Of a stretch of 64,000 nt of DNA, positions 22,353 through 63,198 are shown piece by piece (position 1 is the first letter of the stretch; every line of letters begins with the position of its first letter). Under the pieces are notes generated by a model, which was given only the letters and a program-made list of their open reading frames with translations, was not told the DNA's origin and did not search any database. Location: positions 62,001 through 126,000 of IMG/VR virus record IMGVR_UViG_3300044712_002668, one strand, 5' to 3'. The position numbers were made by a program, and so were the translations under genes.

Positions 22353-22437
22353 GCATATCCGCACATATATTTTAGACCGGTTCTTGTTAATACAACACGT
22401 AATAAGTACACATAAGAATAGATTAGGAGATTTTACT

Positions 22438-41263: not shown

Positions 41264-41330
41264 CAATGCATTGTTTTGCATACCTTGAGCAGCACTTGGC
41301 CATTCAGATATATGGAAGCTTGAGGTATAA

Positions 41331-44567: not shown

Positions 44568-47500
44568 TGTCAAATCTAAACATAGTAAATATTGTACCAA
44601 CCAACAGTAGGACTATAAACGCAAAATTTTCGGATCCTGTAACTCCTTTATTGGGTACCGAAAACGTTGTTGTAACTTCTACTGTTTCAGGGGTTCCAGA
44701 TCCTAAAGTATTAGGTATTTATGTAAATGAAAATATCGTTCTGGTGTATACCCTTCCATTGACACCTTATGCAAAATATACAATAACCTTTCAATCAACT
44801 CCAAATTTAAAAGTACAAGATAGTTCTGGAACAAAGTTTCTTCTTGAAGATGGAATTTACAACGTATCAAAATTCATAGGTCCTGAGGACCCTGACAATC
44901 CGATACGTGATATCTTGGTTTCAAATCTTCAACAAAATGTTTATGATCTAACTCCTGGTACATTGGTAAGAACAATACTTGATCAATTGGCTACCAATTT
45001 TTCAAAGGTAAACCACGATATATACCAGGCCAAGAATGAAAACTATCTTACCTTGCTTATTCAAGATGAACAAAAAACTCGTGGTTTTGGCCCATGGGAC
45101 AGGTTGAACCAAGAAGGCGCTTATGAGGTTATAAGGGTTGGTTTAACAGAAACAAATGCCAATTTGCCTGGAGCTATAACTTTTACAAGCTTTCCAAGAG
45201 ATCCTATTACCTTACAAGGTGTAACAGTTCAAAATGAAACCCTTACATTCGGAAGCGGATCTGGCACATATGATAAACAAACTCTTACAGTAAAAAATAA
45301 TCCTGTAACCAGATTGACATCAGTTCAAATTAATTACTCTAACGGAAGTTCTTTTGTATATAATATAAACCAATATGGTTATAGAATATTGAATGCAAAG
45401 TATGATTCTACATATGGACGACCATATTCTTTATTGAGTGACAATCAATTTGAACTCAGTGATGATTTGTTTGATTTGCCAACCTTTGTTGCTCCTGGTG
45501 GTAATGACACTATAGTTGTAACATATGAGTATAAACTTTTAAGTAGAATTGTTACAGAGGATTCTGTTACGGTAACTCAGGTTCTATCGGCTGTACGTGA
45601 GCCGGCACCAGCAGAAGCTACCTTATTCTCAATTAAGAATGCTCCGGTTGTTACAAGTGCTGGTAAAGATGTTACAAGTGCTGGTATCCAGTTTTTGGAT
45701 CCTTATTCTACCACACCTTTTAGAAGTACGCACCCAGCGTTTTTATATGAAATCCCTTATAGGGAAGGTGGTTTGCCAAAGCTTCCTGGCCAATATGCCG
45801 TTGACTATACTACTGGCAGAGTTTTTGTTTATGGAGCCCAAAACAATGATGGTACAGGGTTCTTCCCACCAGCAATGACATATTATTACAAAGATACCTT
45901 TGTAAGCAAACTAGACTATACATATGTACCAGATCAGTATGATTTGGTAGCATCTCCTTTAAGAGAATTGATTGGACAAACAGCAACCATTTCATTCAAC
46001 TATGATCAGGTGCTTACACCTGGCGTAGACTATGATGCAACTGTTCACCAAGAAGTTCTTAATGAAAGAATTGGAAACAGACTTATCAGTTCAAATACTT
46101 TGGTGGTAGCTAACGCTCCTGTAACCGATGTTTTTAGAATATATAATGAAACAACTGGTGAAATATATAATGCTACCAGATTCAGTTTTAACAAGATATC
46201 ATTTTCATATAACAAATCACCTAGAATATTTGACACTACAAGAGAGCGCGCATCATTTCAGGATGTAACTAGTGAATCATTGGTTTTGGCAAAAGAATTT
46301 CTAAGCACTAGTGGTTATAGAATATTCAAGTTTGTTCTGAATAACAACAAGATAGTATCTGGCACTGAAGACCTGATAGGTAGCAGCTATAATACAAGTG
46401 CGTTTTTCAGTAGACAGGATGTGTTTGCTCAAGAGGTATACTATGACTCACAAGAGCTTACTGAAACTATAAACGTAGCAAGATTGGTTATCGGTCAATA
46501 TCAGATCAATTACCAAGATGGTGTTGTGTATGTTGCTGTTTCTCCAGCCCAAACACCAAGCGTTGGAACGATATCCTATAAAAAACTAGCTGTATCTCCA
46601 GCAAACCCACATGTTATATCTGTAAGCAATATATACTATAGTATAAATCAAAACACAGGTGTATCAAAACAGCTTGATTACAGTGGTTTTGATGATGGTG
46701 TCATATACCCATCTGAATATGATTTATCAGATGAAAGGTTTACAAATAAAAATACGTTAGCCCCTTACATTTATGACACTGGAACTATTACTGTTACCGA
46801 TGATATCAAAGCATTACGTGGCGTATATGATGCGTATGATTTGAATAACAGTGTAATACCAACAAACTTTGCAGAGAACGCTACCTTTAGCGCAAATGTT
46901 ATTACACTATCTCCTCAGGGGATTATGAAGTCTGGACAATTTATTGTTAGCGGCGCTCTAACAATTACCGTTCCATATTTATCTCCTGGTATTGTATTGG
47001 GTTCGGTATTCAGCGTAATACGTATCACTGACAATCAGCAATTAGTAGCTGGTGCAAGTGTAAATACAAATACCATTACACTTTCCCCTAGCAGTGGTGT
47101 TGTAGCTGGTGATGTAGTAAATGTAATATACTATGTTGTTATGAATGGGGCGGCTACCCCGGTAGTTGATTATAATAAAGGTGAATATTATATTGACTAT
47201 ACATATCTTGCAGATGAAATATTGGTAAGCTATGAATACGGTGACAACGTAATAGACTTCAGACAAAATGAGACGGTTTCTCCTGGTAGCACATACTATG
47301 TTTCTTATAGAGTAGGTGCTCTTAGAAATGCATTGTTAAATAACTTTGCAGCATTGATAAAGATCCCAGAGTTACAAGCTTTCGACTCTTATCTTGATAG
47401 GGAGGTATATAGAGACATTCTCATAGGGGCTTTACAAACCTTCACTAAGGGTCCAACAAACCCAGCTTTCAAACAACTTGTTTCAAGTGTTACAAAGATA

Positions 47501-50500
47501 GAACCACAGATTACAGAAGATCTGTTCAATGCCTGGTCTTTGGGTGTAAGTTATTTGAAGCCAAATGGAACAAGTGTTTCAGGAACACCACAACTTACAG
47601 TTGGCAAATATGATCAAGGGTTAGCTATCAGAAAAACAGGGGATGCAGTATCTTTTCCAGTATCAAACAATTTGAGATTGGAAGAGGGTACCTTGGAAAT
47701 GTGGGTTATACCTGATTGGGATGGTGTAGACAATGATGCTTCAATTACTTTCTCTGTATTGAAAAACTCTCTTCCTATAACATCAAGCTCTGTCTTTATA
47801 GGATCTAGAAGTTACAATCCTGAAATCATTGATGGATCTTTTACGCTAAACAGAAACGATAGCAATAGTCCTGAAGGTTTGCCTTCTGCTATATTTTTGA
47901 ATAATAGCGGATTGTTTATATATTATGATAAAGATAATAAACAATGGAAGATGCTGGCTAAAGAACCAATGGGTTCGGCTGCATCCTATACAGGAAGCTT
48001 GACATCAACTGGTGAATTTTATAATGTTGGATTTATTCCTGGTGTTGGTGAGCTTGATGATGTTTTGAGATCATCATCTCAAACGTTGGATTTTGAATTC
48101 AACTTCAGCCCATCAGATCCTCAGGATGGATATGATGGATATGTTGATGGGTATGTAACAGGATATAAATTTGATGGTATTCAGTTGATGTCTGATAATG
48201 ACCATTATATCTTTGACTTTGGTAAGACAGAGAATACTAATAGATTCTCGCTGTACAAAGATGGTCGTGGATACATTGTATTTGAGGTATGGGACCGTGG
48301 AGGGTTCAGTAATGGAGTAAAACCTGAGAGGCGAAACGTATATCGTGTTAGTTCAGATATAAGGGATTGGACGGCAGGATCATCTCACCATGTTGCCGTG
48401 TCATGGATACTGAACTCATCTGATAGAAGAGATGAGATGCATTTATATATTGATGGATTTGAAACTCCAAATATTATGCGTTATGGTAATATACCTGATA
48501 TTGCCTCTACAAACAGATTCCGCACTATTGTTCCAGAACAGGTATTGGGAATAGTGCCAAAAAATACTATTGCAGGAAATGACTTACAGATATTTACAGG
48601 ATCAAATGTAGTAGAATCAGCCTCTGTTGATTTTCAAGCTGGTGGAATTTTGCCAGGTGATTTGATAGAGTTACAGGAACAAGGTTTAGGTACATATACC
48701 ATAACATATGTTTCTGGTAATCAGTTAACTATCAGCTCTATAATGCCGTTTACATTATCAGATGCAAGGTTCTCAGTAAACCCAACAAGCTTTGTGGTAT
48801 ATACAGAAATTGATATTTATAAAAACATTGCGGTATTTATCTCTACCGGTCCTAATGACCCTGGTACAGAAATCCCAGGAGTAAGGGCTAACATTCCTGG
48901 TTACAGCATTGAAAGAAATACTCTTAATCAAAGAATTCTTAAAATATTAGGAGATGCAAATGCTGGTGACACCGTATTGATCAAGCCATTGGGATTGAAT
49001 CATCGTAGATGCAGAGAAAGATTATATCTATGGAATGATCAGTCTATAATAAAAACTGCATTACCTCCACCTATCAACTTGGATGATGTTGTATTGAGAC
49101 CGGTACAATTGCCACTTACTCCGATAGGGCCAAGTAATGCAACCATTATAGGGATGGATTTTGATATAACATTTACAAGTGTTAGCCAGCCTAGCAACCC
49201 TCTTGAGGGAAGGCATTTGGAAGTAAGGATCACTGGAGAGAATACATCCTTTACAACTCCTACAGTGGTTACTATAAATGGTACTTCAACTGGTGGTGTA
49301 ACAGAGACACTTACATTTACATCTGCAGTAAAACAAAGTACTTCTTATAAATGGCAAACCATTACAAGTGTTCATGTAGTAACAACCCCAATTGTGCTGA
49401 CACAAAATTGTGTATCCATAGAAATAAAGGAATTGTACTCTGTTACAAACCCTGATGGAAATACTATTTATCCAGTAATCAGGTTTGCTTTCAAAACTCA
49501 AGGTGGTCTATCCCTTTCTGGATCAGGTACAACACTGGTTACAGATGTCAATGGATACTTTGCAGACTCTGATGTTGGTAACTTGTTAGAAATAACCGCG
49601 CCACCAGCGGTGGCAGGGTTGTATGAGATAGTTCAAAAAATTGATAACTACAATGTTGTATTGAATATACCTACACCTACCTCATTTACAAATGGAAAAT
49701 ATTCAATATACAATATAAGCATTGGTAGAAGTGGTTTTCAGAATGGTTTCATGTTTTTTGAAAGAGCTGGTTTTACCAATGTACCATTCTATATTCCTCA
49801 GGGGTATTTTGATATAGACTTTGCGGCATGGCTGGAGGTACCATTTGATCCTATAGATCAAACCGCTTATATTGGAAACGATATAACATTACAAAAACCA
49901 GCCAATGCTGTAATAGATGAATTTAGAATTTTGAATTATCAACTCACAGATACAAGGGTAGGTGAAACGGTTGATGTTCAATCAATAACTACAAATGCTG
50001 TTGAGTTTGCTCCATTCACAAATGATCCTCAAACACTTACATTATTACATTTTGAACAATTACCACCTATAAATGATACAGAATTTTACATCTATGCTAC
50101 AAAGGAGTATGTACAATCTGCAACCAGTGTAAATTCAAAATTTGGAACATGTATTGTTATTAAAGACAAGGGATTGGTATTTGATAATGATGGAACCTTG
50201 AATACCAGCAGTGATGGTATGGTTGAATTCTGGGTAAGCCCAAGATTTGATACATATAATGACCCTATACCAAGAGTATATTTTGATGCTGCAGCGTCTA
50301 TTGTTGAAAACAACACCAGTTTAACAAAAGAAATTGTAAAGGTATCTGGAAAGATAAACAAAGTACTATCTGTCAAAATGGCAAATGATAGTGTAACAGA
50401 TTATTATGGTGGTGGTGTAATAGGCCCAGATCGTCAAACCATATACTTGAACAAACCTTTACCATTCCAGCAAAGCCCTGTTGTCATCACTTATGTTTCT

Positions 50501-51217
50501 ACTGGAACCCAGGGTGATAGGCTGACGATATATAAAGATAGGGATGGTTTTATAAATCTATCCGTTCTGGCTGGTGGAAGTTTATTTGAAACCCGTCAAC
50601 CTGTATTCTGGCCAAGGGATACATGGCACCGTGTCAGGGCTTCATTCAAGTTTAACCGTTCAGATCATAAAGATGAGATAAGATTGTTTGTGGATGGTGA
50701 AGAGAAGGGTATTTTGATGTTCGGCGCTCCAAACGTTCTATTCGGAGAAGGAACAAGCTTTGGACAAAACTATACTGGTGTTACGAATCAAAAACTTGTT
50801 GCTGATATAAACTTTCTTGACACTATCAATCAGTTTTCTATTGGTCAAGACTTTACAGGAAACTATGGGGCTCAGGCTAGGTTTGATAATATAAAAATAA
50901 GTAACAGAAGTATTGATCCTCTTTTGGTTGGAAACCAACCTAAAGATGTGTATTTCAATACAAATTCTGATTTCATATATCCATCAATCTCTGATGCGTT
51001 CACTACCTTCTTGATGGATTTTGATCAATTGGTACAAAAAAATACAGATTTTGCTATGGTAATAGATCCCGTCTCTGGTATTTTCAATTTTACCCTGAAT
51101 ATCATTGATTCTTTTGACATAGTGATAGATAATTCTAAGGTCCAGAATATCCTTGAAGCTATGATAAAGGTTCTGAAGCCAGCGGTATCAAAGGTTCAAA
51201 TTAACTATATAAAGTGA
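44567..51217 (+). CDS. Very large baseplate wedge protein (gpI/gp7-like) with LamG/concanavalin-like domains
   Basis: YRDILIGALQTFTKGPT wedge motif; EGTLEMWV, HHVAVSW, LYIDG, IDEFRI, WHRVRASF LamG patterns; C-terminal IKVLKPA. Confidence 0.65.
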   Translation: MSNLNIVNIVPTNSRTINAKFSDPVTPLLGTENVVVTSTVSGVPDPKVLGIYVNENIVLVYTLPLTPYAKYTITFQSTPNLKVQDSSGTKFLLEDGIYNVSKFIGPEDPDNPIRDILVSNLQQNVYDLTPGTLVRTILDQLATNFSKVNHDIYQAKNENYLTLLIQDEQKTRGFGPWDRLNQEGAYEVIRVGLTETNANLPGAITFTSFPRDPITLQGVTVQNETLTFGSGSGTYDKQTLTVKNNPVTRLTSVQINYSNGSSFVYNINQYGYRILNAKYDSTYGRPYSLLSDNQFELSDDLFDLPTFVAPGGNDTIVVTYEYKLLSRIVTEDSVTVTQVLSAVREPAPAEATLFSIKNAPVVTSAGKDVTSAGIQFLDPYSTTPFRSTHPAFLYEIPYREGGLPKLPGQYAVDYTTGRVFVYGAQNNDGTGFFPPAMTYYYKDTFVSKLDYTYVPDQYDLVASPLRELIGQTATISFNYDQVLTPGVDYDATVHQEVLNERIGNRLISSNTLVVANAPVTDVFRIYNETTGEIYNATRFSFNKISFSYNKSPRIFDTTRERASFQDVTSESLVLAKEFLSTSGYRIFKFVLNNNKIVSGTEDLIGSSYNTSAFFSRQDVFAQEVYYDSQELTETINVARLVIGQYQINYQDGVVYVAVSPAQTPSVGTISYKKLAVSPANPHVISVSNIYYSINQNTGVSKQLDYSGFDDGVIYPSEYDLSDERFTNKNTLAPYIYDTGTITVTDDIKALRGVYDAYDLNNSVIPTNFAENATFSANVITLSPQGIMKSGQFIVSGALTITVPYLSPGIVLGSVFSVIRITDNQQLVAGASVNTNTITLSPSSGVVAGDVVNVIYYVVMNGAATPVVDYNKGEYYIDYTYLADEILVSYEYGDNVIDFRQNETVSPGSTYYVSYRVGALRNALLNNFAALIKIPELQAFDSYLDREVYRDILIGALQTFTKGPTNPAFKQLVSSVTKIEPQITEDLFNAWSLGVSYLKPNGTSVSGTPQLTVGKYDQGLAIRKTGDAVSFPVSNNLRLEEGTLEMWVIPDWDGVDNDASITFSVLKNSLPITSSSVFIGSRSYNPEIIDGSFTLNRNDSNSPEGLPSAIFLNNSGLFIYYDKDNKQWKMLAKEPMGSAASYTGSLTSTGEFYNVGFIPGVGELDDVLRSSSQTLDFEFNFSPSDPQDGYDGYVDGYVTGYKFDGIQLMSDNDHYIFDFGKTENTNRFSLYKDGRGYIVFEVWDRGGFSNGVKPERRNVYRVSSDIRDWTAGSSHHVAVSWILNSSDRRDEMHLYIDGFETPNIMRYGNIPDIASTNRFRTIVPEQVLGIVPKNTIAGNDLQIFTGSNVVESASVDFQAGGILPGDLIELQEQGLGTYTITYVSGNQLTISSIMPFTLSDARFSVNPTSFVVYTEIDIYKNIAVFISTGPNDPGTEIPGVRANIPGYSIERNTLNQRILKILGDANAGDTVLIKPLGLNHRRCRERLYLWNDQSIIKTALPPPINLDDVVLRPVQLPLTPIGPSNATIIGMDFDITFTSVSQPSNPLEGRHLEVRITGENTSFTTPTVVTINGTSTGGVTETLTFTSAVKQSTSYKWQTITSVHVVTTPIVLTQNCVSIEIKELYSVTNPDGNTIYPVIRFAFKTQGGLSLSGSGTTLVTDVNGYFADSDVGNLLEITAPPAVAGLYEIVQKIDNYNVVLNIPTPTSFTNGKYSIYNISIGRSGFQNGFMFFERAGFTNVPFYIPQGYFDIDFAAWLEVPFDPIDQTAYIGNDITLQKPANAVIDEFRILNYQLTDTRVGETVDVQSITTNAVEFAPFTNDPQTLTLLHFEQLPPINDTEFYIYATKEYVQSATSVNSKFGTCIVIKDKGLVFDNDGTLNTSSDGMVEFWVSPRFDTYNDPIPRVYFDAAASIVENNTSLTKEIVKVSGKINKVLSVKMANDSVTDYYGGGVIGPDRQTIYLNKPLPFQQSPVVITYVSTGTQGDRLTIYKDRDGFINLSVLAGGSLFETRQPVFWPRDTWHRVRASFKFNRSDHKDEIRLFVDGEEKGILMFGAPNVLFGEGTSFGQNYTGVTNQKLVADINFLDTINQFSIGQDFTGNYGAQARFDNIKISNRSIDPLLVGNQPKDVYFNTNSDFIYPSISDAFTTFLMDFDQLVQKNTDFAMVIDPVSGIFNFTLNIIDSFDIVIDNSKVQNILEAMIKVLKPAVSKVQINYIK

Positions 51218-51221
51218 TGAT

Positions 51222-54191
51222 ATGATGACAACACGAAACTCAGTCTCTATTATACAAAATCGTTGGTATGACGGTCAACGCGTTGATCAGCAGGATTTAG
51301 TTACCGATCAAACCAGGAATGTGGGTACAGATGCGGCGATTATAAATAATCACTTTGGCTCAGGTGTTCTACCTAATGCAAGTTTACCTGTAACAGTTTT
51401 CGATACAGATAACCTTCTTCCAGATCAGGTAGCATTGATAGCTTCTGGTGATTTTGACGGTACAGGTTTAGAACCTATTGGTCAACCAAGTGATACCAGC
51501 AATGGTAATCAGTTATCTGTTGAGTTGATGGATTCAGATTTAAACGGACCATCTACTGCATTTGGTAGAATGAGTACAAAGGTACTTATAATAGGTCTTG
51601 ACTTTCAAGGATCTCTTCAGTACGAAAGGTTTTACTTCTATAAGAAAGAAAAACAAGTTTCTCAAAAACATTATGCAAAAGTGTTATGTGTTTTCTTCAA
51701 TGATTTTATAGGTAACACAAACTGTTCAAGGGATTTGGGCGGCAGGGTTGTAATCAAAGAAGCTAACAGTTTTGAGTTGTCCAGGGATCCTGTCATGACA
51801 GCTCAGGATACCCAACCAAACATATTTTTTCGTGATTTCAAGATATCAACATTTTCCGGTGGAACAAATCCTACGGTTACATTGTATCAAGCATTGCAGG
51901 CTGGTATAGGAAACCAATATTCAGTTGATGGTTTAAATATTACCACCACCGCTCTTGAAAACATCTATTTGCCTTCTGGGGATGTAACTACAAAGATAGG
52001 GCAAAAATTTCTAGCTCTAACAAATAACATTCAAAAAATAAGCTTACTTTTAGGTGTTGACCAGGATACCACAACTACTACTGAACATTGGTTTGATTGG
52101 AGTGGAGAGCTTATTGTAAGTGTTTATGCCTTACAAACAACTGTTTCTTCACCAAGCGATCTTGTACCAACTTTAGCTATAGAGTTTGATCCGGCTGCAC
52201 AGCCAATTACTCAGTTCAGTTTGAATCAACAATCATTAAGGGATTTAGGTTATGTACTAAACAATGTTGCTCAACCTATAGATCTTGTTTTTAGTGCTTC
52301 CCCTCTGGGTAGTTCTACAAACTCTGTAATAACGGTTGGTCAATATTATGCGGTTGTTATTAACAGGGCAGGAGATGCAAGTACTGGTAGTATTTTTGCA
52401 GCAGCAGGGGCCACTTCAAACTCTGATACCCGTGTAAGCATCTACTCAGGATTATGGACAGATATACCACAAGAAAGCTTATGGTTTCAGGTATGGACAG
52501 ATGCTGCAAAAGTATCTGATGGACAGGGTTATGATTCTGGTAATGGTATTCAAATACCTAAAACAATACAGAACAGCAGTGGTGCCTATGTTGATTACTC
52601 ATTTGGTTTGAATCAATTTTCTGATACAGGGCATAACACTTTAAATACTGCAATTATAGAAGCTGTCTTGACTCAAAGTCAGCAAGAACAAGATGAAAGA
52701 ACTGGTAGTCCAGTTTATTCTAGACAGCAATATACACCATCACTTAGTTTTGTTACAAACTCAACGCTTCAAACAATCCAAGAAACTGGTAATCCTTTAA
52801 TCATTGGAAGTACAAGGGATACAAACCCTATTAGTAACTATTCTGTAACCGGAACCCAACCATATCCTGGTTTGGTTAAAGGAGATACCTATACCCTTGT
52901 AGCTCCAGATCCATCCGTAATAGCACAAAACCTTATAGGTAGCAAATTGATACCAAATGATGATTGTGCAGGTTTGGATTACCGTATTATGAAAGTGTCA
53001 ATCTGTACCGATGGGTATGGTGATGTAAATGGTGATGGGGTTATTGATGAAGCAGATGCCAATAGAGCTATTGCACTTATTGGCGAATCCCTTTCTTCAG
53101 CATCGACACAACAAAAAATTATTGATGGTTACATATCTACTCTTGAAATATTAAGAGCTGACGTTAATGGTAATGGTATTGTTGATGCTTATGATGCTCA
53201 GTTGATTGCATCATTCATTGCCAGAGATATTTCAACATTCCCATACGGAAGATCCTTTCAGCATGTTGAATTTCAGGTTCAACAGAGTATAGGAAGATAT
53301 GATGGATACTTTGATTGTGATGGGTATATCAGACTAGACGGTTATATTGGGCAGAACAAAATAGACCCTGCAAGTCTTGGTATTTATGCTCAAATTTATG
53401 ATGGGTATATTATACCACCACAAATGGATAAGGCAGATCCTGCTTGGACAACGGTACCATATGTACCTGTACCATTCCTGATTACACCTCAGGCATTCTG
53501 GCAAGATTATCAAGTTCAATTCAGTAGTGCTACAAGAATGGTACCTGCTGTATTTACATCTCAGAGCGGAGGCAGAGTATCAACCTCGACTGTTTGTACA
53601 AGCCCAAGCATAACTAGCTGTAGTAATGTTACTGATATTATAACACAGACAGATCCTGGTAAAAATGATATCTTTATTCCAGATAACTTGATTATAAGAG
53701 GAAACATTTTAAATGTTGATGGTACTTTTTATAAGCAAGATTTTGAGGTAAAGCATTTCGTCTTGGAGCTTCCACCAGAAGTATTCTCACAAGCATCTAT
53801 TGATGTTTTCCATAAATTGGTAGCAGATGCAGGGGATGGTTTTACATCTGCTGGATATCCTGCAATGAGATATAGTGATTGTACCACTGTAGGGTTGGAT
53901 GCTTTGATTTATAACAGACTTCGTTTTGGAGTATCTATTCAATCAATAGTACCCAACCTTGATGGTTATAGTGTCGCTGATGGTTATGGCGTAATTGTTG
54001 ATGACTTGATTGGTATATACATGGATCCTATTTATGGAATTATGACAATTACAGCAAAGGATCTTGACGAGGATTTGACCAAACCAAACTTGATTACAAA
54101 GATCGAGATTGTGGTGTATGCCAAGAAAGCTGGATGGCAAAATACTACTCAAATAATTCCACCAAATCAAATCATGGGACTTGTTACTTGA
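51222..54191 (+). CDS. Baseplate/fibre-attachment protein with a dockerin-like EF-hand pair and 8 DGY motifs
   Basis: N-terminal WYDGQRVDQQDL..DQ; GDVNGDGVIDEADA and ADVNGNGIVDAYDA. Confidence 0.55.
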   Translation: MMTTRNSVSIIQNRWYDGQRVDQQDLVTDQTRNVGTDAAIINNHFGSGVLPNASLPVTVFDTDNLLPDQVALIASGDFDGTGLEPIGQPSDTSNGNQLSVELMDSDLNGPSTAFGRMSTKVLIIGLDFQGSLQYERFYFYKKEKQVSQKHYAKVLCVFFNDFIGNTNCSRDLGGRVVIKEANSFELSRDPVMTAQDTQPNIFFRDFKISTFSGGTNPTVTLYQALQAGIGNQYSVDGLNITTTALENIYLPSGDVTTKIGQKFLALTNNIQKISLLLGVDQDTTTTTEHWFDWSGELIVSVYALQTTVSSPSDLVPTLAIEFDPAAQPITQFSLNQQSLRDLGYVLNNVAQPIDLVFSASPLGSSTNSVITVGQYYAVVINRAGDASTGSIFAAAGATSNSDTRVSIYSGLWTDIPQESLWFQVWTDAAKVSDGQGYDSGNGIQIPKTIQNSSGAYVDYSFGLNQFSDTGHNTLNTAIIEAVLTQSQQEQDERTGSPVYSRQQYTPSLSFVTNSTLQTIQETGNPLIIGSTRDTNPISNYSVTGTQPYPGLVKGDTYTLVAPDPSVIAQNLIGSKLIPNDDCAGLDYRIMKVSICTDGYGDVNGDGVIDEADANRAIALIGESLSSASTQQKIIDGYISTLEILRADVNGNGIVDAYDAQLIASFIARDISTFPYGRSFQHVEFQVQQSIGRYDGYFDCDGYIRLDGYIGQNKIDPASLGIYAQIYDGYIIPPQMDKADPAWTTVPYVPVPFLITPQAFWQDYQVQFSSATRMVPAVFTSQSGGRVSTSTVCTSPSITSCSNVTDIITQTDPGKNDIFIPDNLIIRGNILNVDGTFYKQDFEVKHFVLELPPEVFSQASIDVFHKLVADAGDGFTSAGYPAMRYSDCTTVGLDALIYNRLRFGVSIQSIVPNLDGYSVADGYGVIVDDLIGIYMDPIYGIMTITAKDLDEDLTKPNLITKIEIVVYAKKAGWQNTTQIIPPNQIMGLVT

Positions 54192-54274: not shown

Positions 54275-55022
54275 ATGGAAATTACGTGTATTAAATGTAA
54301 CACTAAACTATTGGCTAGTGCTGATAATTTTCAATGGAGAAATGATAGTAAAAAGTGGAGACCAGTATGTAAACCATGTATATCACTTAATGCAAAAAAA
54401 AGATATTCTAAAAATAAAGAAGTGATAAAAACCAAAGCGTCAGAATATCGTAAAAAAAATCGTATTAAAATAATAAACTTCATGAGAGAATATAATTATA
54501 GAGATGAAGTCCAGTTAAGAATGAAACAATATCGTATTGATAATAGAAAAAAATTAAGACAAAAAGAAAAAGCATGGAGACAAAAAAATCCTGAAAAAGC
54601 AAAATTGATTTCTCAAAGAAAAACAAAGAAAAGAAACAAAAACGCTTTGGTTAGAATAAGACAAAATGTAAGTAGAGCTATTGGGTTAGCATTGAAAAGA
54701 AAAGGATCCTCAAAACAAGGAGATTCTATATTTTCATATTTACCTTATTCATTTCAAGATTTAAAAAAAACATATTGAAAAACATTTTGAACCATGGATG
54801 AATTGGGATAATTATGGTGTATACAAAGCAAAAGAGTGGGATGATAATAATCAATTAACGTGGAAATGGCAAATAGATCATATAATACCGCATTCTGAGT
54901 TTTTATATTCATCAATGAAAGATCCTGTTTTTATAAAATGTTGGAGTTTAGATAATTTAAGACCATATTCTGCTAAAAATAATTGTATAGATGGGTGTTT
55001 TAGAAGCAGACATAAAGGATAA
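54275..55022 (+). pseudogene. HNH-type homing endonuclease split by a frameshift
   Basis: CIKC...CKPC Zn finger and basic helix (54275..54778) continue as HIEKHFEPWMNWDNYG...WQIDHIIP...NLRPYSAKNN if one A is removed from the A8 run at 54763-54770. Confidence 0.8.
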
Positions 55023-55023
55023 T

Positions 55024-56151
55024 ATGAGGATAAAAATTCAACAATTTTTGTTTGGACAAGGAGCCCATTCATGGGCGTTGGTTGGTAAAAATATTGGCAG
55101 AGCATTAATTCATCTAGGCCATGAAGTAGATTTTGTTTCTACTGATGGGTTTGAAGATAAATTTTGTCCAAATGATTTAAAACCTTTTGTCAAAAAAGAT
55201 CCTGTAGGAGAGTATGATTGTCAAATCAGTTACACAGCTCCTCACAATTGGCCGAACTATTTATCTTATGGAAAAAAGAATCGTTTTGCTATATGGAACT
55301 ATGAGTATAACAACAAAAAAGTAGATCAAGGTTATACGGCTTTGCTACAAGGATTCGGAAAGTACTACAAAAATACAGATATGGTATTACCTTCTTCTAA
55401 TTTTACAAAAGAAGTTTTTAAAAGTATGATGATTCCAGAAGATAAGATGGTTGTTATTCCTCATGGAATTGATCTGGAACAATTCTCTACAACTAAAAAG
55501 TTTCCTCTAAAAACAAAGAAATCAAAAAAGATTCTTTTGAATATAGCTCAACCTCATAGAAGGAAAGCTATCCCATTAGCTTTAGAAGCTTTCGGAAAAG
55601 CTTTTACTAAAGATGATGATGTTTGTTTAGTAGCTAAAGTTTTTAAACAAAACAATAAAGGACAAGCTTTCGATGTAGATTTTACCGGAATGTACAAAAC
55701 ATTTGAAACCAAATATCCTAAACATGCAGAGGTAGAGTTTGTACATAACTACATAGATAACATAGCTGAAATATATAATTCTTGTGATGTTAATTTTTCT
55801 GCTACATATGCAGAATGTTGGCATCTTCCTTCTTTAGAAGCTTTAGCATGTGGATTAATTAATGTTGTTCCTAGATATGGAGGACAATTAGATTTCTGTG
55901 ATGATTTTAATTCTTTACTTATAGATGGTAATGTAGTTCGTGCTCCACGTGATCATCAATACTGGAAGTTTAATCCTTTTGCTGTTCATTTCCAAATAGA
56001 TACGAATGACGCTGCGCAGAAGTTGCGGTGGGCGGTTCATCCAGAAGAAGGGAAAGTTCTTAAAGAAAAATTCGTGTCGAGCATGTCCGAAACAGCCCAG
56101 AAATTCTCCTGGGAGAATGCTGTCAGAAAGATTCTTGATCTATGCACGTAA
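55024..56151 (+). CDS. Glycosyltransferase family 4 (GT-B)
   Basis: VIPHGID, RKAIPLALEAF, ECWHLPSLEALACG; start at ATG 55024. Confidence 0.88.
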   Translation: MRIKIQQFLFGQGAHSWALVGKNIGRALIHLGHEVDFVSTDGFEDKFCPNDLKPFVKKDPVGEYDCQISYTAPHNWPNYLSYGKKNRFAIWNYEYNNKKVDQGYTALLQGFGKYYKNTDMVLPSSNFTKEVFKSMMIPEDKMVVIPHGIDLEQFSTTKKFPLKTKKSKKILLNIAQPHRRKAIPLALEAFGKAFTKDDDVCLVAKVFKQNNKGQAFDVDFTGMYKTFETKYPKHAEVEFVHNYIDNIAEIYNSCDVNFSATYAECWHLPSLEALACGLINVVPRYGGQLDFCDDFNSLLIDGNVVRAPRDHQYWKFNPFAVHFQIDTNDAAQKLRWAVHPEEGKVLKEKFVSSMSETAQKFSWENAVRKILDLCT

Positions 56152-56279
56152 CCTTACGTCACTTTGATCTTTTCGTGATCAATAAATAAATGCAAAAAGC
56201 TGCGCCAATTAAGTATATATATATTAACTATTAATTAAGATCATTAATAGCAAGTACCATGCCAGATGGAGAACAATAG

Positions 56280-56975
56280 ATGACAAAGTTAGCGATAGTG
56301 GTTTTAGCCTATAACAACTGGAGTTATACGAAACAATGTTTGAGTGATTTGCTTCAGCTTCCTGAAGATCATTCAATTATCCTCGTAGATAACGCCAGTT
56401 CAGATGAAACGAAAAATGTAAGTAAGATCTTTAATGATAAGAAATTGGATGTAATAGTTAATGAAGATAACTATGGTTTTGCTAAAGGGTGTAATATTGG
56501 ATTTAAAAAAGCTCAGGAAAAAAGATCTGAGAATGTCATGTTTTTGAACAATGATATCAGGGTGCGTTCTGAACATAAAAACTGGACGGACAGGGTGCTG
56601 TCCCAACTTTCTTCAAAAACGCTTCTAGGGCCAACTGTAGGTATTCTGGATGGTGATCTCAGGTTCGTTTGTGAGGCGGGTAAGATTCCAGAAAAATATA
56701 CCAACACCTACATGAGTGGTTGGTGTGTTACAGCCACAATGGAAACTTGGAATGAACTGGTATTACCAGGGTATGAGGGGCCGTTTTCCGAGGAGTTTGG
56801 CAAGGCTTTTTTTGAAGACAGCGATCTTGGGTTCAGGGCAAGAAATCAAAACATAAAATTTAACATAGTAGATATTCCTGTACATCATTTTGGTCACAAG
56901 ACAACAGACAAATTGAATACAAATGAGCTTTATAAAAATGCCAGAGAAATTTTCGTAAGGAAGTGGAAAAAATGA
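56280..56975 (+). CDS. Glycosyltransferase family 2
   Basis: IILVDNASSDET, NYGFAKGCNIG, FLNND, FFEDSDLG. Confidence 0.9.
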   Translation: MTKLAIVVLAYNNWSYTKQCLSDLLQLPEDHSIILVDNASSDETKNVSKIFNDKKLDVIVNEDNYGFAKGCNIGFKKAQEKRSENVMFLNNDIRVRSEHKNWTDRVLSQLSSKTLLGPTVGILDGDLRFVCEAGKIPEKYTNTYMSGWCVTATMETWNELVLPGYEGPFSEEFGKAFFEDSDLGFRARNQNIKFNIVDIPVHHFGHKTTDKLNTNELYKNAREIFVRKWKK

Positions 56976-57802
56976 AATTGCATATATTAACTTTAACTTG
57001 GAATGGAAAGAAAAGGCTGGAGGCATTGGCTCCAACCTTGGTTTCTTCCTGTAATCATTTGTCTCATGATCCTATATGGTATATAAGAGATAATGGTTCT
57101 AAAGATGATACTTTAGAATATCTGATGAGTAATGATATTCAAAAAGATAAACCTTTAAAATTAAAGGTTTTGTCTGTAGATCATAATAGGGATTCATTTG
57201 CCAGGTGTGTCAATTCTCTACTGGAGATGGCCAACCCAGCAGATGAGGATCTTGTTATGTTGTTGAATGATGATGTTGTTTTTTTCAAAAATGACAGCAT
57301 TCAAAAAATGATAGATTTACAGGACAAGACTGGGGCAGGGATAGTTGGAGCCAGGTTATTGTATCTTAACACAAACAAACTTCAACATGCCGGGATAATC
57401 TTCAGTAAGAGATATAATTCATTGCCATTTCATTTTCGTCCCGGTGAAGAGTCGGATAAGAACTCTGAAAAGAACAGATATTTCCAAGCTGTTACAGCGG
57501 CATGTTGTATAGTGAAAGCATCATCACTGAAAAAGATCAATGGCATGGATGAGGGTTTTAGATGGGCCTTTGATGATGTGGATATGAACTTTCAGATAGG
57601 TAAGAATCTTGGGGAGAAGATAGCTTATTGTGGTAATGTAGGTATTTATCATGAAGAAAGCGTATCTCTTAAAAAGAACCCTGTAAATAAATTGTTTATG
57701 GATGATAATGTAAAACGATTCCGCTCTAAATGGAATGGTAAATATACTATAGACCATGATATGTATTTGGGTAATTCTTTATATAATGAAATTAAAGTTT
57801 AA
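56972..57802 (+). CDS. Glycosyltransferase family 2
   Basis: DNGSKDDT, LLNDD, LQHAG, AVTAAC, FDDVD. Confidence 0.9.
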   Translation: MKLHILTLTWNGKKRLEALAPTLVSSCNHLSHDPIWYIRDNGSKDDTLEYLMSNDIQKDKPLKLKVLSVDHNRDSFARCVNSLLEMANPADEDLVMLLNDDVVFFKNDSIQKMIDLQDKTGAGIVGARLLYLNTNKLQHAGIIFSKRYNSLPFHFRPGEESDKNSEKNRYFQAVTAACCIVKASSLKKINGMDEGFRWAFDDVDMNFQIGKNLGEKIAYCGNVGIYHEESVSLKKNPVNKLFMDDNVKRFRSKWNGKYTIDHDMYLGNSLYNEIKV

Positions 57803-58739
57803 AAATAAGTTCTTTCCATTTGCTTCGGGGATATCTTGGGAAATTGATCAGGGTAAATATGTAGTACCAAAGATAGACGGTGAAACGTGGAAGAGCGTAT
57901 TGAGCAATAAGGATTTACACATAGTTGTATTCGGGGGTTTGTTAGAATCATTTTTTTCATTTTCTTATGCTGAGGCATTGTCTTCATTAGAGCCTGATAA
58001 AGATTTGTATTGGATAGGTGATGATAAATACAAATGCCTATTAAAGGTTAATGGTCTGTGTAAGCCTGGTCAATCAGGTTTGACAAAAACTGATTTGGAA
58101 AAATATCCAGTTCCCTTGTTTTTCGACAAAGAAGACAATGCTTACTTTAATGTGTTGCATGATTATAAGACAAAGCTAAGCTATTGGGGTCAACACCCAA
58201 AAGAAAATAAACTTCCAATACTAAAACAAATATATAATAATCTAATGATCCCTTGGAATAATTATATTCCAAAAACAAGATCATTAGATTTTTCTTTTTA
58301 TAATCATATCAGTATTAAAAATAAACTATCACATAAAACCATACTTATTATACATGATGAAGAAGATAACGCATTGAATTGGAACAAGCACAACATAAGA
58401 GAATTTGCTTTTTTGGTTGGTAAGCATGGTTTCAAAGTGTGTGTTGCAACGCATCATAGCGGAATGTTCTATGATTCAAAAGTTATAGCTATTGAGTATG
58501 ATATTTTGAAGATATTACAACTGATTACAAAGTCATGGATGGTACTATCATCAAAGATAGACTGGTTGTTTATCGCAATGATGATATCCAATGCACACAT
58601 AGTTTCAAAACATCAGGATGGAATTTATAATTTATTTGACAATGCAGAGTTCATAGGAGCAACAAACGTTATATTTACAGATAAGACTTGGATGTCTCCA
58701 ATGGACGTATGCGCAATTTGTGCGGAAGAGGAAAAATGA
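57786..58739 (+). CDS. Divergent GT-B fold protein (GT9/heptosyltransferase-like)
   Basis: GGLLESFFS..AEAL resembles the GT9 N-terminal motif; lies within the GT operon. Confidence 0.4.
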   Translation: MKLKFKNKFFPFASGISWEIDQGKYVVPKIDGETWKSVLSNKDLHIVVFGGLLESFFSFSYAEALSSLEPDKDLYWIGDDKYKCLLKVNGLCKPGQSGLTKTDLEKYPVPLFFDKEDNAYFNVLHDYKTKLSYWGQHPKENKLPILKQIYNNLMIPWNNYIPKTRSLDFSFYNHISIKNKLSHKTILIIHDEEDNALNWNKHNIREFAFLVGKHGFKVCVATHHSGMFYDSKVIAIEYDILKILQLITKSWMVLSSKIDWLFIAMMISNAHIVSKHQDGIYNLFDNAEFIGATNVIFTDKTWMSPMDVCAICAEEEK

Positions 58740-59494
58740 GTTCAACTTCAATAATGATGGTAACCTATAATAGGCTTGAGTTAACAAAACGTATGTTGTC
58801 TTCTTTATGTAAGACGGTACATTCACCATTCAATTTGGTTATAATAGATAACGCTTCTACAGATGGAACGGTTGAATACCTTCAAAACAAAATAGATACT
58901 GAATTTAAAACAGATCATTTAAGAAATTTATTTACTATATTTAATAAAGAAAACAAAGGTATAGCTATTGGAAGAAACCAGGCATTGAAAAATGGGGTTG
59001 ATGTATTCAACAGTGATTGGTTGGTGACATTGGATAATGATGTAGAGATGCCGGATGGATGGCTGGAGGAGTGTCAGAATATTCTGCAGGCGAATAGGGC
59101 TTATGGGGCGATTGGGGTCAATATGGAGAACAAGCCTTATCCCATAGTGACAAAGAATGGTTTTACGTTTCAGGATAAACCTGCGGGTAATCTTGGTACA
59201 GCTTGTATGGTATTTCCAAAGACCACTCAGAAATTATTGGGTTATTTCAACACAGAGTATGGTCCATATGGGGAAGAGGATGCGGATTTTGGAATGAGGT
59301 TACGTGTATCAGGTTTGAAGCTTGGATACATTGAAAGAATGGGTACGCATTTTGGAGAGGGTGAATTAGATAAAGGCGAGTATCGTGAGTACAAGACAGC
59401 TTGTCATAATAAGAATCTGAAGAAGTTCAATGAGAATTGTGCGCTATATGCACAAGGAAAGAAGAAATTATATATGCCTTATAGTGAGGGTTGA
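58736..59494 (+). CDS. Glycosyltransferase family 2
   Basis: TYNRLELT, IIDNASTDGT, NKGIAIGRN, LDND, YGEEDADFG. Confidence 0.9.
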   Translation: MSSTSIMMVTYNRLELTKRMLSSLCKTVHSPFNLVIIDNASTDGTVEYLQNKIDTEFKTDHLRNLFTIFNKENKGIAIGRNQALKNGVDVFNSDWLVTLDNDVEMPDGWLEECQNILQANRAYGAIGVNMENKPYPIVTKNGFTFQDKPAGNLGTACMVFPKTTQKLLGYFNTEYGPYGEEDADFGMRLRVSGLKLGYIERMGTHFGEGELDKGEYREYKTACHNKNLKKFNENCALYAQGKKKLYMPYSEG

Positions 59495-62418: not shown

Positions 62419-62443
62419 GTACTACCTTGATATATTTGTTGGT

Positions 62444-63196: not shown

Positions 63197-63198
63197 AC

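What the first reader, a model, noticed from the sequence alone, without database searches (positions are those of the whole stretch)
53010..53987. DGY hotspot wrapped around a dockerin-like Ca-binding pair in the last baseplate gene
Eight DGY lie in ~330 aa, including DGYFDCDGYIRLDGY (53301-53345) and DGYSVADGY at 6-residue spacing. They flank two dockerin/EF-hand-like repeats (GDVNGDGVIDEADA, ADVNGNGIVDAYDA). Dockerin-type modules usually dock onto cohesins, so this may be a Ca-dependent attachment platform on the baseplate. It also raises the alternative that DGY turns bind metal or a partner protein.
Basis: partly seen in the sequence, partly recalled or inferred. Interest (0 to 1): 0.6.

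Follow-up and report, generated by a model that had tools for sequence, protein, structure and literature searches.

The report
Dockerin module in phage baseplate protein
The last tail-baseplate gene of an uncultured giant phage carries a genuine calcium-binding dockerin module, a part known mainly from bacterial cellulosomes; the Asp-Gly-Tyr motifs around it are a hallmark of this phage lineage's tail, baseplate and fibre-like proteins, not part of the dockerin.

Summary
The gene at 51222-54191 (+, 989 aa) holds eight DGY against 0.29 expected, all within aa 597-922. It also holds two Ca-loop repeats.

The repeats form a real dockerin:
- Pfam Dockerin_1 scores 36.4 bits (cut-off 22.9).
- The predicted fold matches solved dockerins (Z about 10, rmsd 1.8-2.4 A).
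- The Asp/Asn ligand positions are kept in 28 homologues, including a clade where a 93-110 aa insertion splits the two repeats.

No cohesin was found in the phage record, so the "docks onto a cohesin" step stays untested.

DGY is not dockerin-specific. It is enriched tenfold across this 336-kb phage's virion module (82 against 8.1 expected) and not elsewhere in the genome (8 against 9.0). Related tripeptides are not enriched. In relatives it forms variable tandem arrays in the two distal baseplate proteins.

A conserved cluster of at least seven glycosyltransferase genes follows the gene.

A Bacteroidales MAG that bins a related phage contig encodes many T9SS-exported cohesin and dockerin proteins. 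That makes a host cohesin target conceivable but unproven.

Verdict: a known module in a new context, plus an unexplained lineage-wide motif.

The parts
51222..54191 (+). 989-aa distal baseplate protein gene (P0002). It starts 4 nt after the stop of the upstream 2216-aa gene.
   Evidence: ORF and translation. There are 25 full-length homologues in viral contigs at 38-60% identity, always in the same gene order. No PHROG family matches.
51789..52511 (+). aa 190-430: lectin/CBM-like beta-sandwich domain.
   Evidence: The AF2 model has pLDDT mostly 75-90 here. VIA-align gives Z 15.4 (rmsd 2.7 A, 152 aligned) to a phage 812 baseplate chain, Z 12.8 to the mycobacteriophage Douge baseplate central fibre, and Z 11.9 to the Cwp84 lectin-like domain.
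53007..53252 (+). aa 596-677: dockerin module, two Ca-loop/helix repeats with a 33-aa linker.
   Evidence: Pfam Dockerin_1 at 36.4 bits against a cut-off of 22.9, aa 599-664. PDB dockerins match at E 1e-6. pLDDT is 85-91. Z 8-10 and rmsd 1.7-2.4 A over 60-69 residues to 4uyp_B, 8x39_A, 4fl4_G and 2ccl_B.
53022..53057 (+). Ca loop 1, aa 601-612. Ligand positions are D601, N603, D605, D609 and D612.
   Evidence: Conservation in 26 sequences: D601 26/26; N603 24; D605 24; D609 22 (4 Thr); D612 25.
53160..53195 (+). Ca loop 2, aa 647-658. Ligand positions are D647, N649, N651, D655 and D658.
   Evidence: D647 25/26; position 649 D/N 22 (4 Thr); position 651 D 24 / N 2; position 655 T/S/D/N; D658 26/26.
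53301..53408 (+). aa 694-729: DGY cluster. Three DGY lie at 6-residue spacing, a fourth at aa 727, and there is a conserved Cys699.
   Evidence: DGY is kept at these sites in 10-15 of 17 near-clade homologues; only the aa 727 site is kept in the far clade. Predicted as coil with pLDDT 50-67.
53961..53987 (+). aa 914-922: DGY pair in a low-confidence loop. It expands to three or four DGY in homologues L018 and L015.
53733..54188 (+). aa 838-989: C-terminal beta-sandwich of unassigned fold.
   Evidence: pLDDT about 80-90. No structural match at Z >= 5 among 48,161 chains. No PDB sequence match with the profile.
44567..51217 (+). Upstream 2216-aa giant baseplate protein, in the gp7 / arm-scaffold position, with a ConA-like domain.
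   Evidence: Pfam Laminin_G_3. Always adjacent in relatives.
48125..48154 (+). DGY array (DGYDGYVDGY) in the 2216-aa protein, aa 1187-1196. Copy number varies from 2 to 6 or more in homologues.
40832..44567 (+). gp25-like (40832-41263) and gp6-like Baseplate_J (41331-44567) wedge genes. These place the locus in the baseplate.
   Evidence: PHROG baseplate families. Pfam Baseplate_J.
54991..63933 (.). Downstream cluster of at least seven glycosyltransferase genes (GT4, four GT2, a weak GT10-like match on the minus strand, GT11).
   Evidence: Pfam. A GT4 homologue lies downstream in 20 of the 25 related loci, and 4 of the other 5 end within about 1.1-2.7 kb of the gene.

Best explanation
The gene encodes the outermost baseplate protein of an uncultured jumbo myophage. 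The record is 336 kb and the host is probably in Bacteroidota. The gene sits where peripheral, receptor-facing baseplate proteins are encoded, after the gp25-like, gp6-like and 2216-aa gp7-position genes.

The protein has four parts:
- an N-terminal half with a lectin-like beta-sandwich;
- a genuine type-I-like dockerin (aa 596-677);
- a poorly ordered DGY-rich stretch;
- a C-terminal beta-sandwich.

Shown: the dockerin identity, its predicted fold and the conservation of both 12-residue Ca loops.

Inferred: the module folds or rigidifies when it meets Ca2+, as dockerins do. It then offers its two-helix face as a protein-docking surface. My odds for what it docks to are:
- about 0.3 that the target is a cohesin module on the host surface;
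- about 0.15 that the target is an undetected cohesin-like domain in the virion;
- about 0.35 that it has no partner and acts only as a Ca-dependent clasp.

The DGY motifs are a separate phenomenon. They are a protein-level motif selected in the tail, baseplate and fibre-like proteins of this whole phage lineage. They sit mainly at predicted strand or helix ends and in loops, and they are prone to tandem expansion. Two of the eight overlap the dockerin only because of where they fall. The Tyr of the first (Y599) occupies the position before the first Ca loop, where solved dockerins also have Tyr. The second lies in the linker between the repeats.

The confidence given (0.6) is for this statement as a whole. 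On its own, the claim that the module is a genuine dockerin is about 0.9.
For: Dockerin:
- Pfam above the gathering score here and in 22/23 aligned homologues.
- Dockerins are the best PDB sequence matches for the protein and for the family profile, and the only ones at E <= 0.01.
- The AF2 model has pLDDT 85-91 and superposes on solved dockerins at Z 8-10, rmsd about 2 A, about 30% identity.
- Ligand positions 1, 3, 5, 9 and 12 of both loops are conserved. Core helix positions are conserved and surface positions vary.
- The module is retained even when split by a 93-110 aa insertion.

Baseplate position:
-.
- The lectin-like domain resembles the phage 812 baseplate chain, the Douge baseplate fibre and Cwp84 (PMC13433997).

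DGY as a lineage-wide virion motif:
-.
- Controls: T4 has 6 against 2.1 expected and the phage G tail module 2 against 1.7.

Plausibility of a host cohesin:
- 2 of 3 MAGs that bin related phage contigs are Bacteroidota.
- One of them, a Bacteroidales MAG, has 28 Cohesin matches and 11 Dockerin_1 matches. These include adjacent T9SS-tailed cohesin and dockerin proteins.
- 22 of 81 genomes sampled from that order have cohesins above the cut-off.
Against: - No cohesin was detected in the phage record, which is estimated 78% complete.
- The host of this phage is unknown. Binning of a 40%-identical relative's contig into a MAG is weak host evidence, and the other two MAGs gave no cohesin match.
- Orphan dockerin-like modules without cohesins are common outside cellulosomes (general knowledge; Peer et al. 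2009, not read here).
- The positions equivalent to cohesin contacts (10, 11, 17, 18) are the most variable. This fits diversifying recognition but equally fits no binding constraint.
- The bacterial dockerins of the MAG differ from the phage ones, having a degenerate first loop.
- The structure is predicted, not solved.
- The C-terminal third is low confidence.
Confidence: 0.6

Rival explanations
1. Host-cohesin adhesin. The baseplate dockerin is a receptor-binding module that docks the phage onto cohesin modules of T9SS-exported host surface proteins, exploiting the host's own cohesin-dockerin system.
For: - The only known function of the fold is cohesin binding.
- It lies in a distal baseplate protein next to a lectin-like domain.
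- The Bacteroidales MAG that bins a related phage contig has 28 Cohesin matches in 250-3690 aa open frames. One of these is a 1652-aa protein with a Por_Secre_tail, encoded next to a dockerin-bearing T9SS protein.
- Cohesins are present in 22/81 genomes sampled from that order.
- Contact-equivalent positions vary between phages, as receptor-binding residues do.
Against: - The host of this phage is not known.
- The MAG link rests on binning alone, for a relative that is 40% identical.
- The other two MAGs gave no cohesin match.
- No binding test was possible.
- The MAG's own dockerins look different from the phage dockerin.
Confidence: 0.3
2. Partner-less Ca clasp. The dockerin is an orphan module that only stabilises or rigidifies the junction between the two halves of the protein once the virion meets extracellular Ca2+. 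It has no cohesin-type partner.
For: - No cohesin in the phage record.
- The surface positions of both helices are unconstrained while the Ca ligands and the core are conserved.
- The module tolerates a whole domain inserted between its repeats.
- Dockerin-like modules without cohesins are widespread (general knowledge).
Against: - Retaining a complete two-repeat dockerin across 35-60% identical proteins suggests more than a spacer.
- The phage record is incomplete.
- Cohesin-like beta-sandwiches can escape Pfam.
Confidence: 0.35
3. DGY is a sequon. The tripeptide marks sites on virion proteins that are modified, for example glycosylated on Tyr, by the conserved glycosyltransferase cluster immediately downstream.
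For: - Tenfold enrichment confined to the virion module, with no enrichment of DGF, NGY, EGY or TGY.
- Concentration in fibre-like proteins, a stretch of the sheath protein and the distal baseplate proteins, and absence from the gp6-like and gp25-like wedge proteins and from the glycosyltransferases.
- Site turnover and variable tandem arrays.
- At least seven glycosyltransferase genes adjacent here, and a GT4 homologue downstream in 20 of the 25 related loci.
- Virion glycosylation by phage glycosyltransferases has a precedent in mycobacteriophages, as cited in PMC12619734.
Against: - The evidence is purely correlative. Every relative has both features, so there is no contrast to test.
- No known glycosyltransferase uses a DGY sequon, and no literature was found.
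- The glycosyltransferases could instead modify DNA or host glycans.
- Some DGY sites sit inside ordinary structural elements, such as the dockerin edge.
Confidence: 0.1
4. One reading: the DGY turns themselves bind metal and cooperate with the dockerin as one extended Ca/metal platform.
For: - Asp-rich turns occur next to the Ca loops.
- In 14 homologues the second loop itself reads DGDGY.
- Cys595 and Cys699 are conserved next to two DGY sites in the near clade.
Against: - The 90 DGY sites in the genome show no Asp/Asn at -2 or -4, so there is no DxDxDG loop.
- Most DGY lie in proteins without a dockerin.
- The far clade keeps the dockerin but loses seven of the eight DGY sites.
- No Ca-binding family other than Dockerin or EF-hand was detected.
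Confidence: 0.07

Closest known systems
Type I dockerin modules of cellulosomal proteins (Pfam PF00404; e.g. PDB 4uyp_B ScaB dockerin, 8x39_A Clo1313_0689 double dockerin, 2ccl_B Xyn10B dockerin)
   Same: - Two tandem repeats, each a 12-residue EF-hand-like Ca loop followed by a helix.
- Asp/Asn at loop positions 1, 3, 5, 9 and 12.
- A Tyr-Gly immediately before loop 1.
- About 30% identity to solved dockerins.
- The predicted fold superposes at rmsd about 2 A, Z 8-10.
   Different: - It lies inside a phage baseplate protein, not at the end of a secreted enzyme or scaffoldin.
- It is internal (aa 596-677 of 989).
- The inter-repeat linker is long at 33 aa, and one clade has a further 93-110 aa inserted there.
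- No cohesin is found in the same genome.
- tblastn of the module against 50,697 phage records gave no match, and no paper in the held library describes one.
Peripheral baseplate proteins of large myophages: phage 812 baseplate chains 9euj_G / 9eui_Q / 9euf_0 (probably the tripod protein gp119) and the T4 gp10-gp12 position
   Same: - It is encoded after the gp25-like, gp6-like and gp7-position genes.
- It contains a Cwp84-like lectin beta-sandwich, as described for the tripod leg domain (PMC13433997).
   Different: - Only one domain matches (152 residues, 18% identity).
- There is no sequence-family match.
- The identity of the matched chain as the tripod protein is my inference.
- Trimer formation was not tested.
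- The tripod protein has no dockerin.
T9SS-exported cohesin and dockerin proteins of Bacteroidales MAGs (loci L050, L051)
   Same: - They carry Dockerin_1 and Cohesin modules outside Clostridia, in the phylum that probably hosts this phage lineage.
- They are likely surface exposed, given the Por_Secre_tail domain.
   Different: - They are bacterial multidomain cargo proteins.
- Their dockerins have a degenerate first loop, unlike the canonical phage loops.
- No interaction with the phage protein has been shown.
EF-hand Ca-binding proteins (calmodulin-like)
   Same: The 12-residue DxNxDG-type loops. There are weak EF-hand Pfam matches in 4-6 homologues and calmodulin matches at E about 0.1-0.2.
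   Different: Dockerin scores are far better (E 1e-6 to 1e-9), and the structural matches are to dockerins, not EF-hand pairs.

Membership tests
Dockerin type I (PF00404) | Sequence match to the family model above its curated threshold | tested here: met
   36.4 bits against a cut-off of 22.9, E 6e-9, aa 599-664; 39.9 bits in the six-frame search; 22 of 23 aligned homologues match.
Dockerin type I (PF00404) | Two tandem repeats, each a 12-residue Ca loop followed by a helix | tested here: met
   Loops at aa 601-612 and 647-658. Predicted helices at 610-618 and 656-666, plus linker helices.
Dockerin type I (PF00404) | Asp/Asn (or Ser/Thr at position 9) at Ca-ligand positions 1, 3, 5, 9, 12, conserved in relatives | tested here: met
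   Positions 1 and 12 are Asp in 25-26 of 26 sequences in both loops. Positions 3 and 5 are D/N in 22-26. Position 9 is D/T/S/N. Positions are degenerate in a few distant homologues, e.g. L030.
Dockerin type I (PF00404) | Dockerin three-dimensional fold | tested here: met
   Predicted model only. pLDDT 85-91. Z 10.2 / rmsd 2.4 A / 69 aa to 4uyp_B; Z 10.2 / 1.8 A / 67 aa to 8x39_A. Foldseek probability 1.00.
Dockerin type I (PF00404) | Ca2+ binding and Ca-dependent folding | not testable with these tools
   Needs ITC, DSF or NMR on the expressed module.
Dockerin type I (PF00404) | A cognate cohesin partner | tested here: not met
   - There is no Cohesin (PF00963) match at E <= 1 in the 336-kb phage record, which is 78% complete.
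- The test against the protein's own C-terminal domain gave no answer.
- Cohesins do exist in a candidate host MAG, but no link has been shown.
- This lowers the claim that it works by cohesin docking. It does not lower the claim that the module is a dockerin.
Myophage peripheral baseplate protein (phage 812 tripod / T4 gp10-like) | Encoded in the baseplate block after the gp25-, gp6- and gp7-like genes | tested here: met
   Gene order gp25-like 40832-41263, Baseplate_J 41331-44567, 2216-aa gene, then this gene. The same order holds in the 25 related loci.
Myophage peripheral baseplate protein (phage 812 tripod / T4 gp10-like) | Sequence or whole-chain structural homology to a known peripheral baseplate protein | tested here: inconclusive
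   No PHROG or Pfam baseplate family matches. Only the lectin-like domain matches phage 812 chains, at Z 13.7-15.4.
Myophage peripheral baseplate protein (phage 812 tripod / T4 gp10-like) | Presence in the virion and trimeric assembly | not tested
EF-hand pair | Helix-loop-helix pairs matching EF-hand models better than other families | tested here: not met
   No EF-hand match in this protein at E <= 0.1. Only weak matches in 4-6 homologues. Calmodulins at E 0.1-0.2 against dockerins at 1e-6.

The most novel reading that the evidence does not exclude
DGY is a virion-specific peptide code. It would be a three-residue sequon, placed singly and in expandable tandem arrays on the tail, baseplate and fibre-like proteins. 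The conserved glycosyltransferase cluster next to the baseplate genes would read it, for example by Tyr-linked glycosylation made in the cytoplasm.

The phage would then decorate its own adsorption apparatus with glycans, and slippage of 9-nt repeats would tune the number of sites.

A second, independent novel reading is that the dockerin docks the phage onto host T9SS-displayed cohesins (probability about 0.3; see the rival explanations).
Probability: 0.1. Interest if true: 0.85.

Novelty: new variant of a known kind. Interest (0 to 1): 0.55.

Why it matters
Dockerins are the textbook high-affinity, Ca-dependent connectors of cellulosomes. I found no description of one built into a phage baseplate, and no similar module in 50,697 phage records.

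If it binds host-surface cohesins, it would be a new class of phage receptor recognition, based on a host protein-protein interaction system. It would also be a ready-made, engineerable Ca-switchable adaptor on a virion.

The split version, with a whole domain inserted between the two repeats, is a natural experiment on dockerin architecture.

Separately, the tenfold, virion-restricted, sequence-specific DGY enrichment with expandable arrays is an unexplained regularity in a broad lineage of environmental jumbo phages. It lies next to a conserved multi-glycosyltransferase cluster, and it is directly testable by mass spectrometry once a member is cultured.

Tried and rejected
- **Cohesin in the phage:** a Pfam Cohesin search of the whole record found nothing at E <= 1.
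- **Self-docking:** Complex prediction of the dockerin (aa 590-680) against the protein's own C-terminal beta-sandwich (aa 836-989) returned "no answer", score 0.00. This is evidence neither for nor against binding. I chose the pair because several cohesins appeared among noise-level structural matches (Z about 3.1) to that domain. I reject those matches as evidence.
- **C-terminal third (aa 672-989):** refolding it alone gave a worse model, mean pLDDT 60. It gave no fold match at Z >= 5 and no PDB profile match. The ESM Atlas search gave no feature-based hit, and its structure matches all had TM 0.40 or below, on an Atlas model of pTM 0.29.
- **Cultured relatives:** tblastn of the protein and of the dockerin alone against 50,697 phage records gave no match. 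The sheath protein finds only remote matches.
- **Other family scans:** Pfam terminase, Gp23 and HK97-capsid models found nothing in the record. The capsid protein was therefore not identified, and its DGY content is unknown.
- **DNA-level origin of DGY:** rejected, with 90 in-frame occurrences against 14 in other frames or antisense.
- **DGY as a generic Asp-Gly hairpin preference or an AT-bias effect:** disfavoured, because DGF, NGY, SGY and EGY are not enriched.
- **DGY as the product of one repeated domain:** rejected. Most of the 90 contexts are unrelated, although two fibre-like proteins contain short runs of similar DGY contexts.
- **Literature:** searches for a DGY motif, and for dockerins with jumbo phage, baseplate or tail fiber, found nothing relevant.
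- **Host DNA in the record:** the higher-GC stretch at 225-245 kb showed only small ORFs and no obvious host DNA.
Full report
**1. What is there**

The finding lies in one ORF, window 51222-54191 on the + strand, encoding 989 aa.

DGY occurs eight times, at aa 597, 635, 694, 700, 706, 727, 914 and 920. Composition predicts 0.29, and none of 5000 shuffles gave more than three. All eight lie in the C-terminal 393 aa. The codons are mixed synonyms.

Across the whole phage record the DGY-coding pattern is in frame 90 times. It occurs 8 times in other sense frames and 6 times antisense. The signal is therefore at the protein level.

**2. Genomic setting**

The window is bases 62001-126000 of a 335,988-base virus record that CheckV rates 78% complete. 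It is a jumbo phage with 36 tRNA genes and about 38% GC.

Upstream genes include:
- a tail sheath gene (22384-24921);
- a gp25-like wedge protein (40832-41263);
- a gp6-like Baseplate_J protein (41331-44567);
- a 2216-aa protein with a ConA-like domain (44567-51217).

The 989-aa gene starts 4 nt after that giant gene and is the last structural gene of the block. Next come a small ORF with a weak endonuclease match and at least seven glycosyltransferase genes, at 54991-63933.

Twenty-five viral contigs encode full-length homologues at 38-60% identity. All have the same order of gp6-like gene, giant gene and this gene. Twenty of the 25 have a GT4 homologue downstream, and four of the other five loci end within about 1.1-2.7 kb of the gene.

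No cultured phage has a detectable homologue. The sheath protein finds only remote matches.

**3. The dockerin is real**

- Pfam Dockerin_1 matches aa 599-664 at 36.4 bits against a gathering score of 22.9. It is the only dockerin in the record.
- 22 of 23 aligned homologues match the same family.
- Against PDB sequences, the segment and the family profile hit only dockerins at E <= 0.01. These include 4uyp_B, 8x39_A, 1daq_A and 2mte_A, at E down to 1e-6 for the segment and 1.5e-8 for the profile. Calmodulins appear only at E 0.1-0.2.
- An AlphaFold2 model built on 23 homologues has pLDDT 85-91 over aa 601-670.
- That part superposes on solved dockerins at Z 8-10, rmsd 1.7-2.4 A, over 60-69 residues and about 30% identity. 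Foldseek probability is 1.00.
- The Ca-ligand positions are conserved in 26 sequences. Loop 1 has D601 26/26, N603 24, D605 24, D609 22 (otherwise Thr) and D612 25. Loop 2 has D647 25, position 649 D/N 22, position 651 D/N 26, position 655 T/S/D/N and D658 26/26.

That refutation fails.

Helix core positions are conserved. The positions that contact cohesins in type I dockerins (10, 11, 17, 18) are the most variable. This fits either diversifying recognition or no constraint.

**4. A split dockerin**

In the more distant clade (L019-L026, L031, L032) the stretch between the two Ca loops is 126-143 residues instead of 33. This is an insertion of about 93-110 residues with a beta-rich sequence. 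Both loops and helices are retained.

I know of no described dockerin with a domain inserted between its repeats. That statement rests on my own knowledge and on the negative literature searches.

**5. The rest of the protein**

aa 190-430 are predicted with good confidence as a lectin/CBM-like beta-sandwich. Its best matches are:
- phage 812 baseplate chains (Z 13.7-15.4, rmsd 2.7 A, about 152 residues, 18% identity);
- the mycobacteriophage Douge baseplate central fibre (Z 12.8);
- a Bxb1 tail-tip chain (Z 11.5);
- the Cwp84 lectin-like domain (Z 11.9).

The phage 812 paper describes the leg domain of the trimeric tripod protein as Cwp84-like and a possible receptor-binding site (PMC13433997). 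I infer, but did not verify, that the matched chains are that protein.

The C-terminal 150 aa form a confident beta-sandwich without a significant structural or sequence match. aa 690-840 and 911-927 are low confidence.

**6. DGY is a lineage-wide virion motif, not a dockerin accessory**

*Enrichment in this phage.*
- In the whole record DGY is the most enriched tripeptide, 90 observed against 17 expected.
- In the virion module (genome 46-170 kb) it is 82 against 8.1 expected, tenfold.
- In the remaining 61,000 aa it is 8 against 9.0.
- DGF (1.4x), NGY (1.5x), SGY (1.35x), EGY (0.3x) and TGY (0.3x) are not enriched.

*Where the sites are.*
- The richest proteins are two fibre-like proteins outside the window, of 1689 and 1741 aa. 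Both have ConA-like domains, and the second also has collagen repeats.
- Other carriers are a stretch of the sheath protein (aa 198-222), several large unannotated virion-module proteins, and the two distal baseplate proteins.
- The gp6-like protein, the gp25-like protein, a 1740-aa protein and all the glycosyltransferases have none.
- The 90 contexts are mostly unrelated. The weak consensus is [T/V/A]-DGY-[G/V/A/S], with no Asp/Asn at -2 or -4, so this is not a DxDxDG Ca loop.

*Controls.* T4 structural genes have 6 against 2.1 expected, and the phage G tail module has 2 against 1.7.

*In relatives.*
- The two baseplate proteins are again DGY-rich, with 7-24 per locus against about 1 expected.
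- Within the near clade the eight sites are kept in 10-15 of 17 sequences. The far clade keeps only the aa 727 site, while other DGY sites appear elsewhere.
- Loops carry tandem DGY or DGYx arrays of variable length. The 2216-aa family has two to six or more copies. The aa 914-922 pair of this protein expands to three or four copies in L018 and L015.

*Wider scan.* A scan of IMG/VR for a (DGY)3 coding pattern gave 45 hits, 32 of them in frame. Fourteen of those are in homologues of the 2216-aa protein, down to 25% identity, and two are in homologues of window ORF 13974-19178.

*How the arrays arise.* Some arrays are perfect 9-nt repeats, which implies recent slippage. Others use mixed codons, which implies maintenance at the protein level.

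*The two DGY inside the dockerin.* Y599 precedes the first loop, where solved dockerins also have Tyr (see the alignment). The second DGY is in the linker. In 14 homologues the second loop reads DGDGY.

**7. Is there a cohesin?**

None was found in the phage record. I used the single complex-prediction job on the dockerin against the protein's own C-terminal beta-sandwich. It returned no answer.

Three MAG contigs carry homologues of the protein. The MAGs are assigned to Bacteroidales, Chitinophagales and Gammaproteobacteria.

The Bacteroidales MAG has 28 Cohesin matches, 21 of them above the cut-off, and 11 Dockerin_1 matches, on contigs other than the phage one. Two adjacent genes there encode:
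- a 1451-aa beta-helix protein with a dockerin and a T9SS sorting domain;
- a 1652-aa protein with cohesins, a PKD domain and a T9SS sorting domain.

In 81 genomes sampled from that order, 22 have cohesins above the cut-off and seven have ten or more matches.

A published lineage of freshwater jumbo phages, the "moraphages", is predicted to infect Bacteroidota and has four core glycosyltransferase groups (PMC12619734). I did not test whether the present phage belongs to it.

Surface cohesins therefore exist in plausible hosts. The link to this phage is circumstantial.

**8. Interpretation**

*Shown:* a genuine, conserved, Ca-loop-bearing dockerin embedded in the last baseplate protein, and DGY as a separate, virion-restricted motif of the lineage.

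*Inferred:* the module is a Ca-dependent docking or rigidifying element of the receptor-facing part of the baseplate.

My odds for its role are:
- about 0.3 for docking onto a host-surface cohesin;
- about 0.15 for docking onto an undetected partner in the virion;
- about 0.35 for a partner-less Ca clasp;
- the remainder unknown.

For DGY I favour a structural and adhesive role. These would be Asp-Gly turns anchored by Tyr, expanding into Tyr-rich loops on the distal proteins. I rate a glycosylation sequon at about 0.1 and metal binding at about 0.07.

**9. Limits**

- All structures are predictions.
- The phage record is incomplete.
- DGY statistics use my own simple ORF calls.

Noticed in passing
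window 54991-63933: A cluster of at least seven glycosyltransferase genes directly follows the baseplate genes: GT4, four GT2, a weak GT10-like match (below the Pfam cut-off) on the minus strand, and GT11. Two unannotated ORFs of 327 and 668 aa lie among them. A GT4 homologue lies downstream in 20 of the 25 related loci. The target (virion, DNA or host glycan) is unknown.
   Followed up: partly
window 48125-48154 (aa 1187-1196 of the 2216-aa protein); loci L002-L026, L053-L094: A tandem DGY/DGYx array lies just before the ConA-like domain of the giant baseplate protein. Copy number varies from 2 to 6 or more among homologues down to 25% identity. Some arrays are perfect 9-nt repeats (L057, L066), which suggests replication slippage.
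   Followed up: yes
loci L019-L026, L031, L032 (e.g. L019 7998-11231): The distant clade of the 989-aa protein has a 93-110 aa beta-rich insertion between the two dockerin repeats, giving a split dockerin. Both Ca loops are retained.
   Followed up: partly
L050 (G001:C151:18001-28000) and L051 (G001:C194:56001-68000): The Bacteroidales MAG that bins a related phage contig encodes many large proteins with Cohesin and/or Dockerin_1 modules, and the ones examined also carry T9SS C-terminal sorting domains. This is a cohesin-dockerin system outside Clostridia. 22 of 81 genomes sampled from that order have cohesins above the cut-off.
   Followed up: partly
genome G000:C1:153456-158525 and 162321-167546 (outside the window; L036): Two fibre-like proteins of 1689 and 1741 aa have ConA-like domains, and the second also has collagen repeats. 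They carry 10 and 11 DGY. Some sit in repeated contexts: STDGYSG at about 117-aa spacing, and VDGYF[AS]SWGLP at about 50-54-aa spacing.
   Followed up: partly
window 54275-54778: A 167-aa ORF lies between the baseplate gene and the glycosyltransferase cluster. It has only a weak endonuclease PHROG match (E 0.0066). Homologues occur at other positions in L024. It may be a mobile homing-endonuclease-type gene.
   Followed up: no
genome G000:C1:184644-215020 (outside the window): 36 tRNA genes are clustered in about 30 kb, mostly on the minus strand. Two are odd predictions with undetermined anticodons.
   Followed up: no
window 51222-54191, aa 595, 699, 792, 800, 887: Five cysteines are conserved in the near clade. 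Two of them (C595, C699) are adjacent to DGY sites and are mostly absent in the far clade. They may form disulfides or a metal site.
   Followed up: no
genome 46-170 kb (virion module): The tripeptides WDR (13 occurrences, 12-fold) and TWD (12 occurrences, 5-fold) are also strongly enriched in the virion module. This presumably reflects a repeated domain; I did not examine it.
   Followed up: no
window 29874-35096 and 13974-19178: Two further giant ORFs of 1740 and 1734 aa in the structural block match no family. The first has no DGY and may be the tape measure protein. The second has five DGY, and its homologues carry DGY arrays (L077, L082).
   Followed up: no
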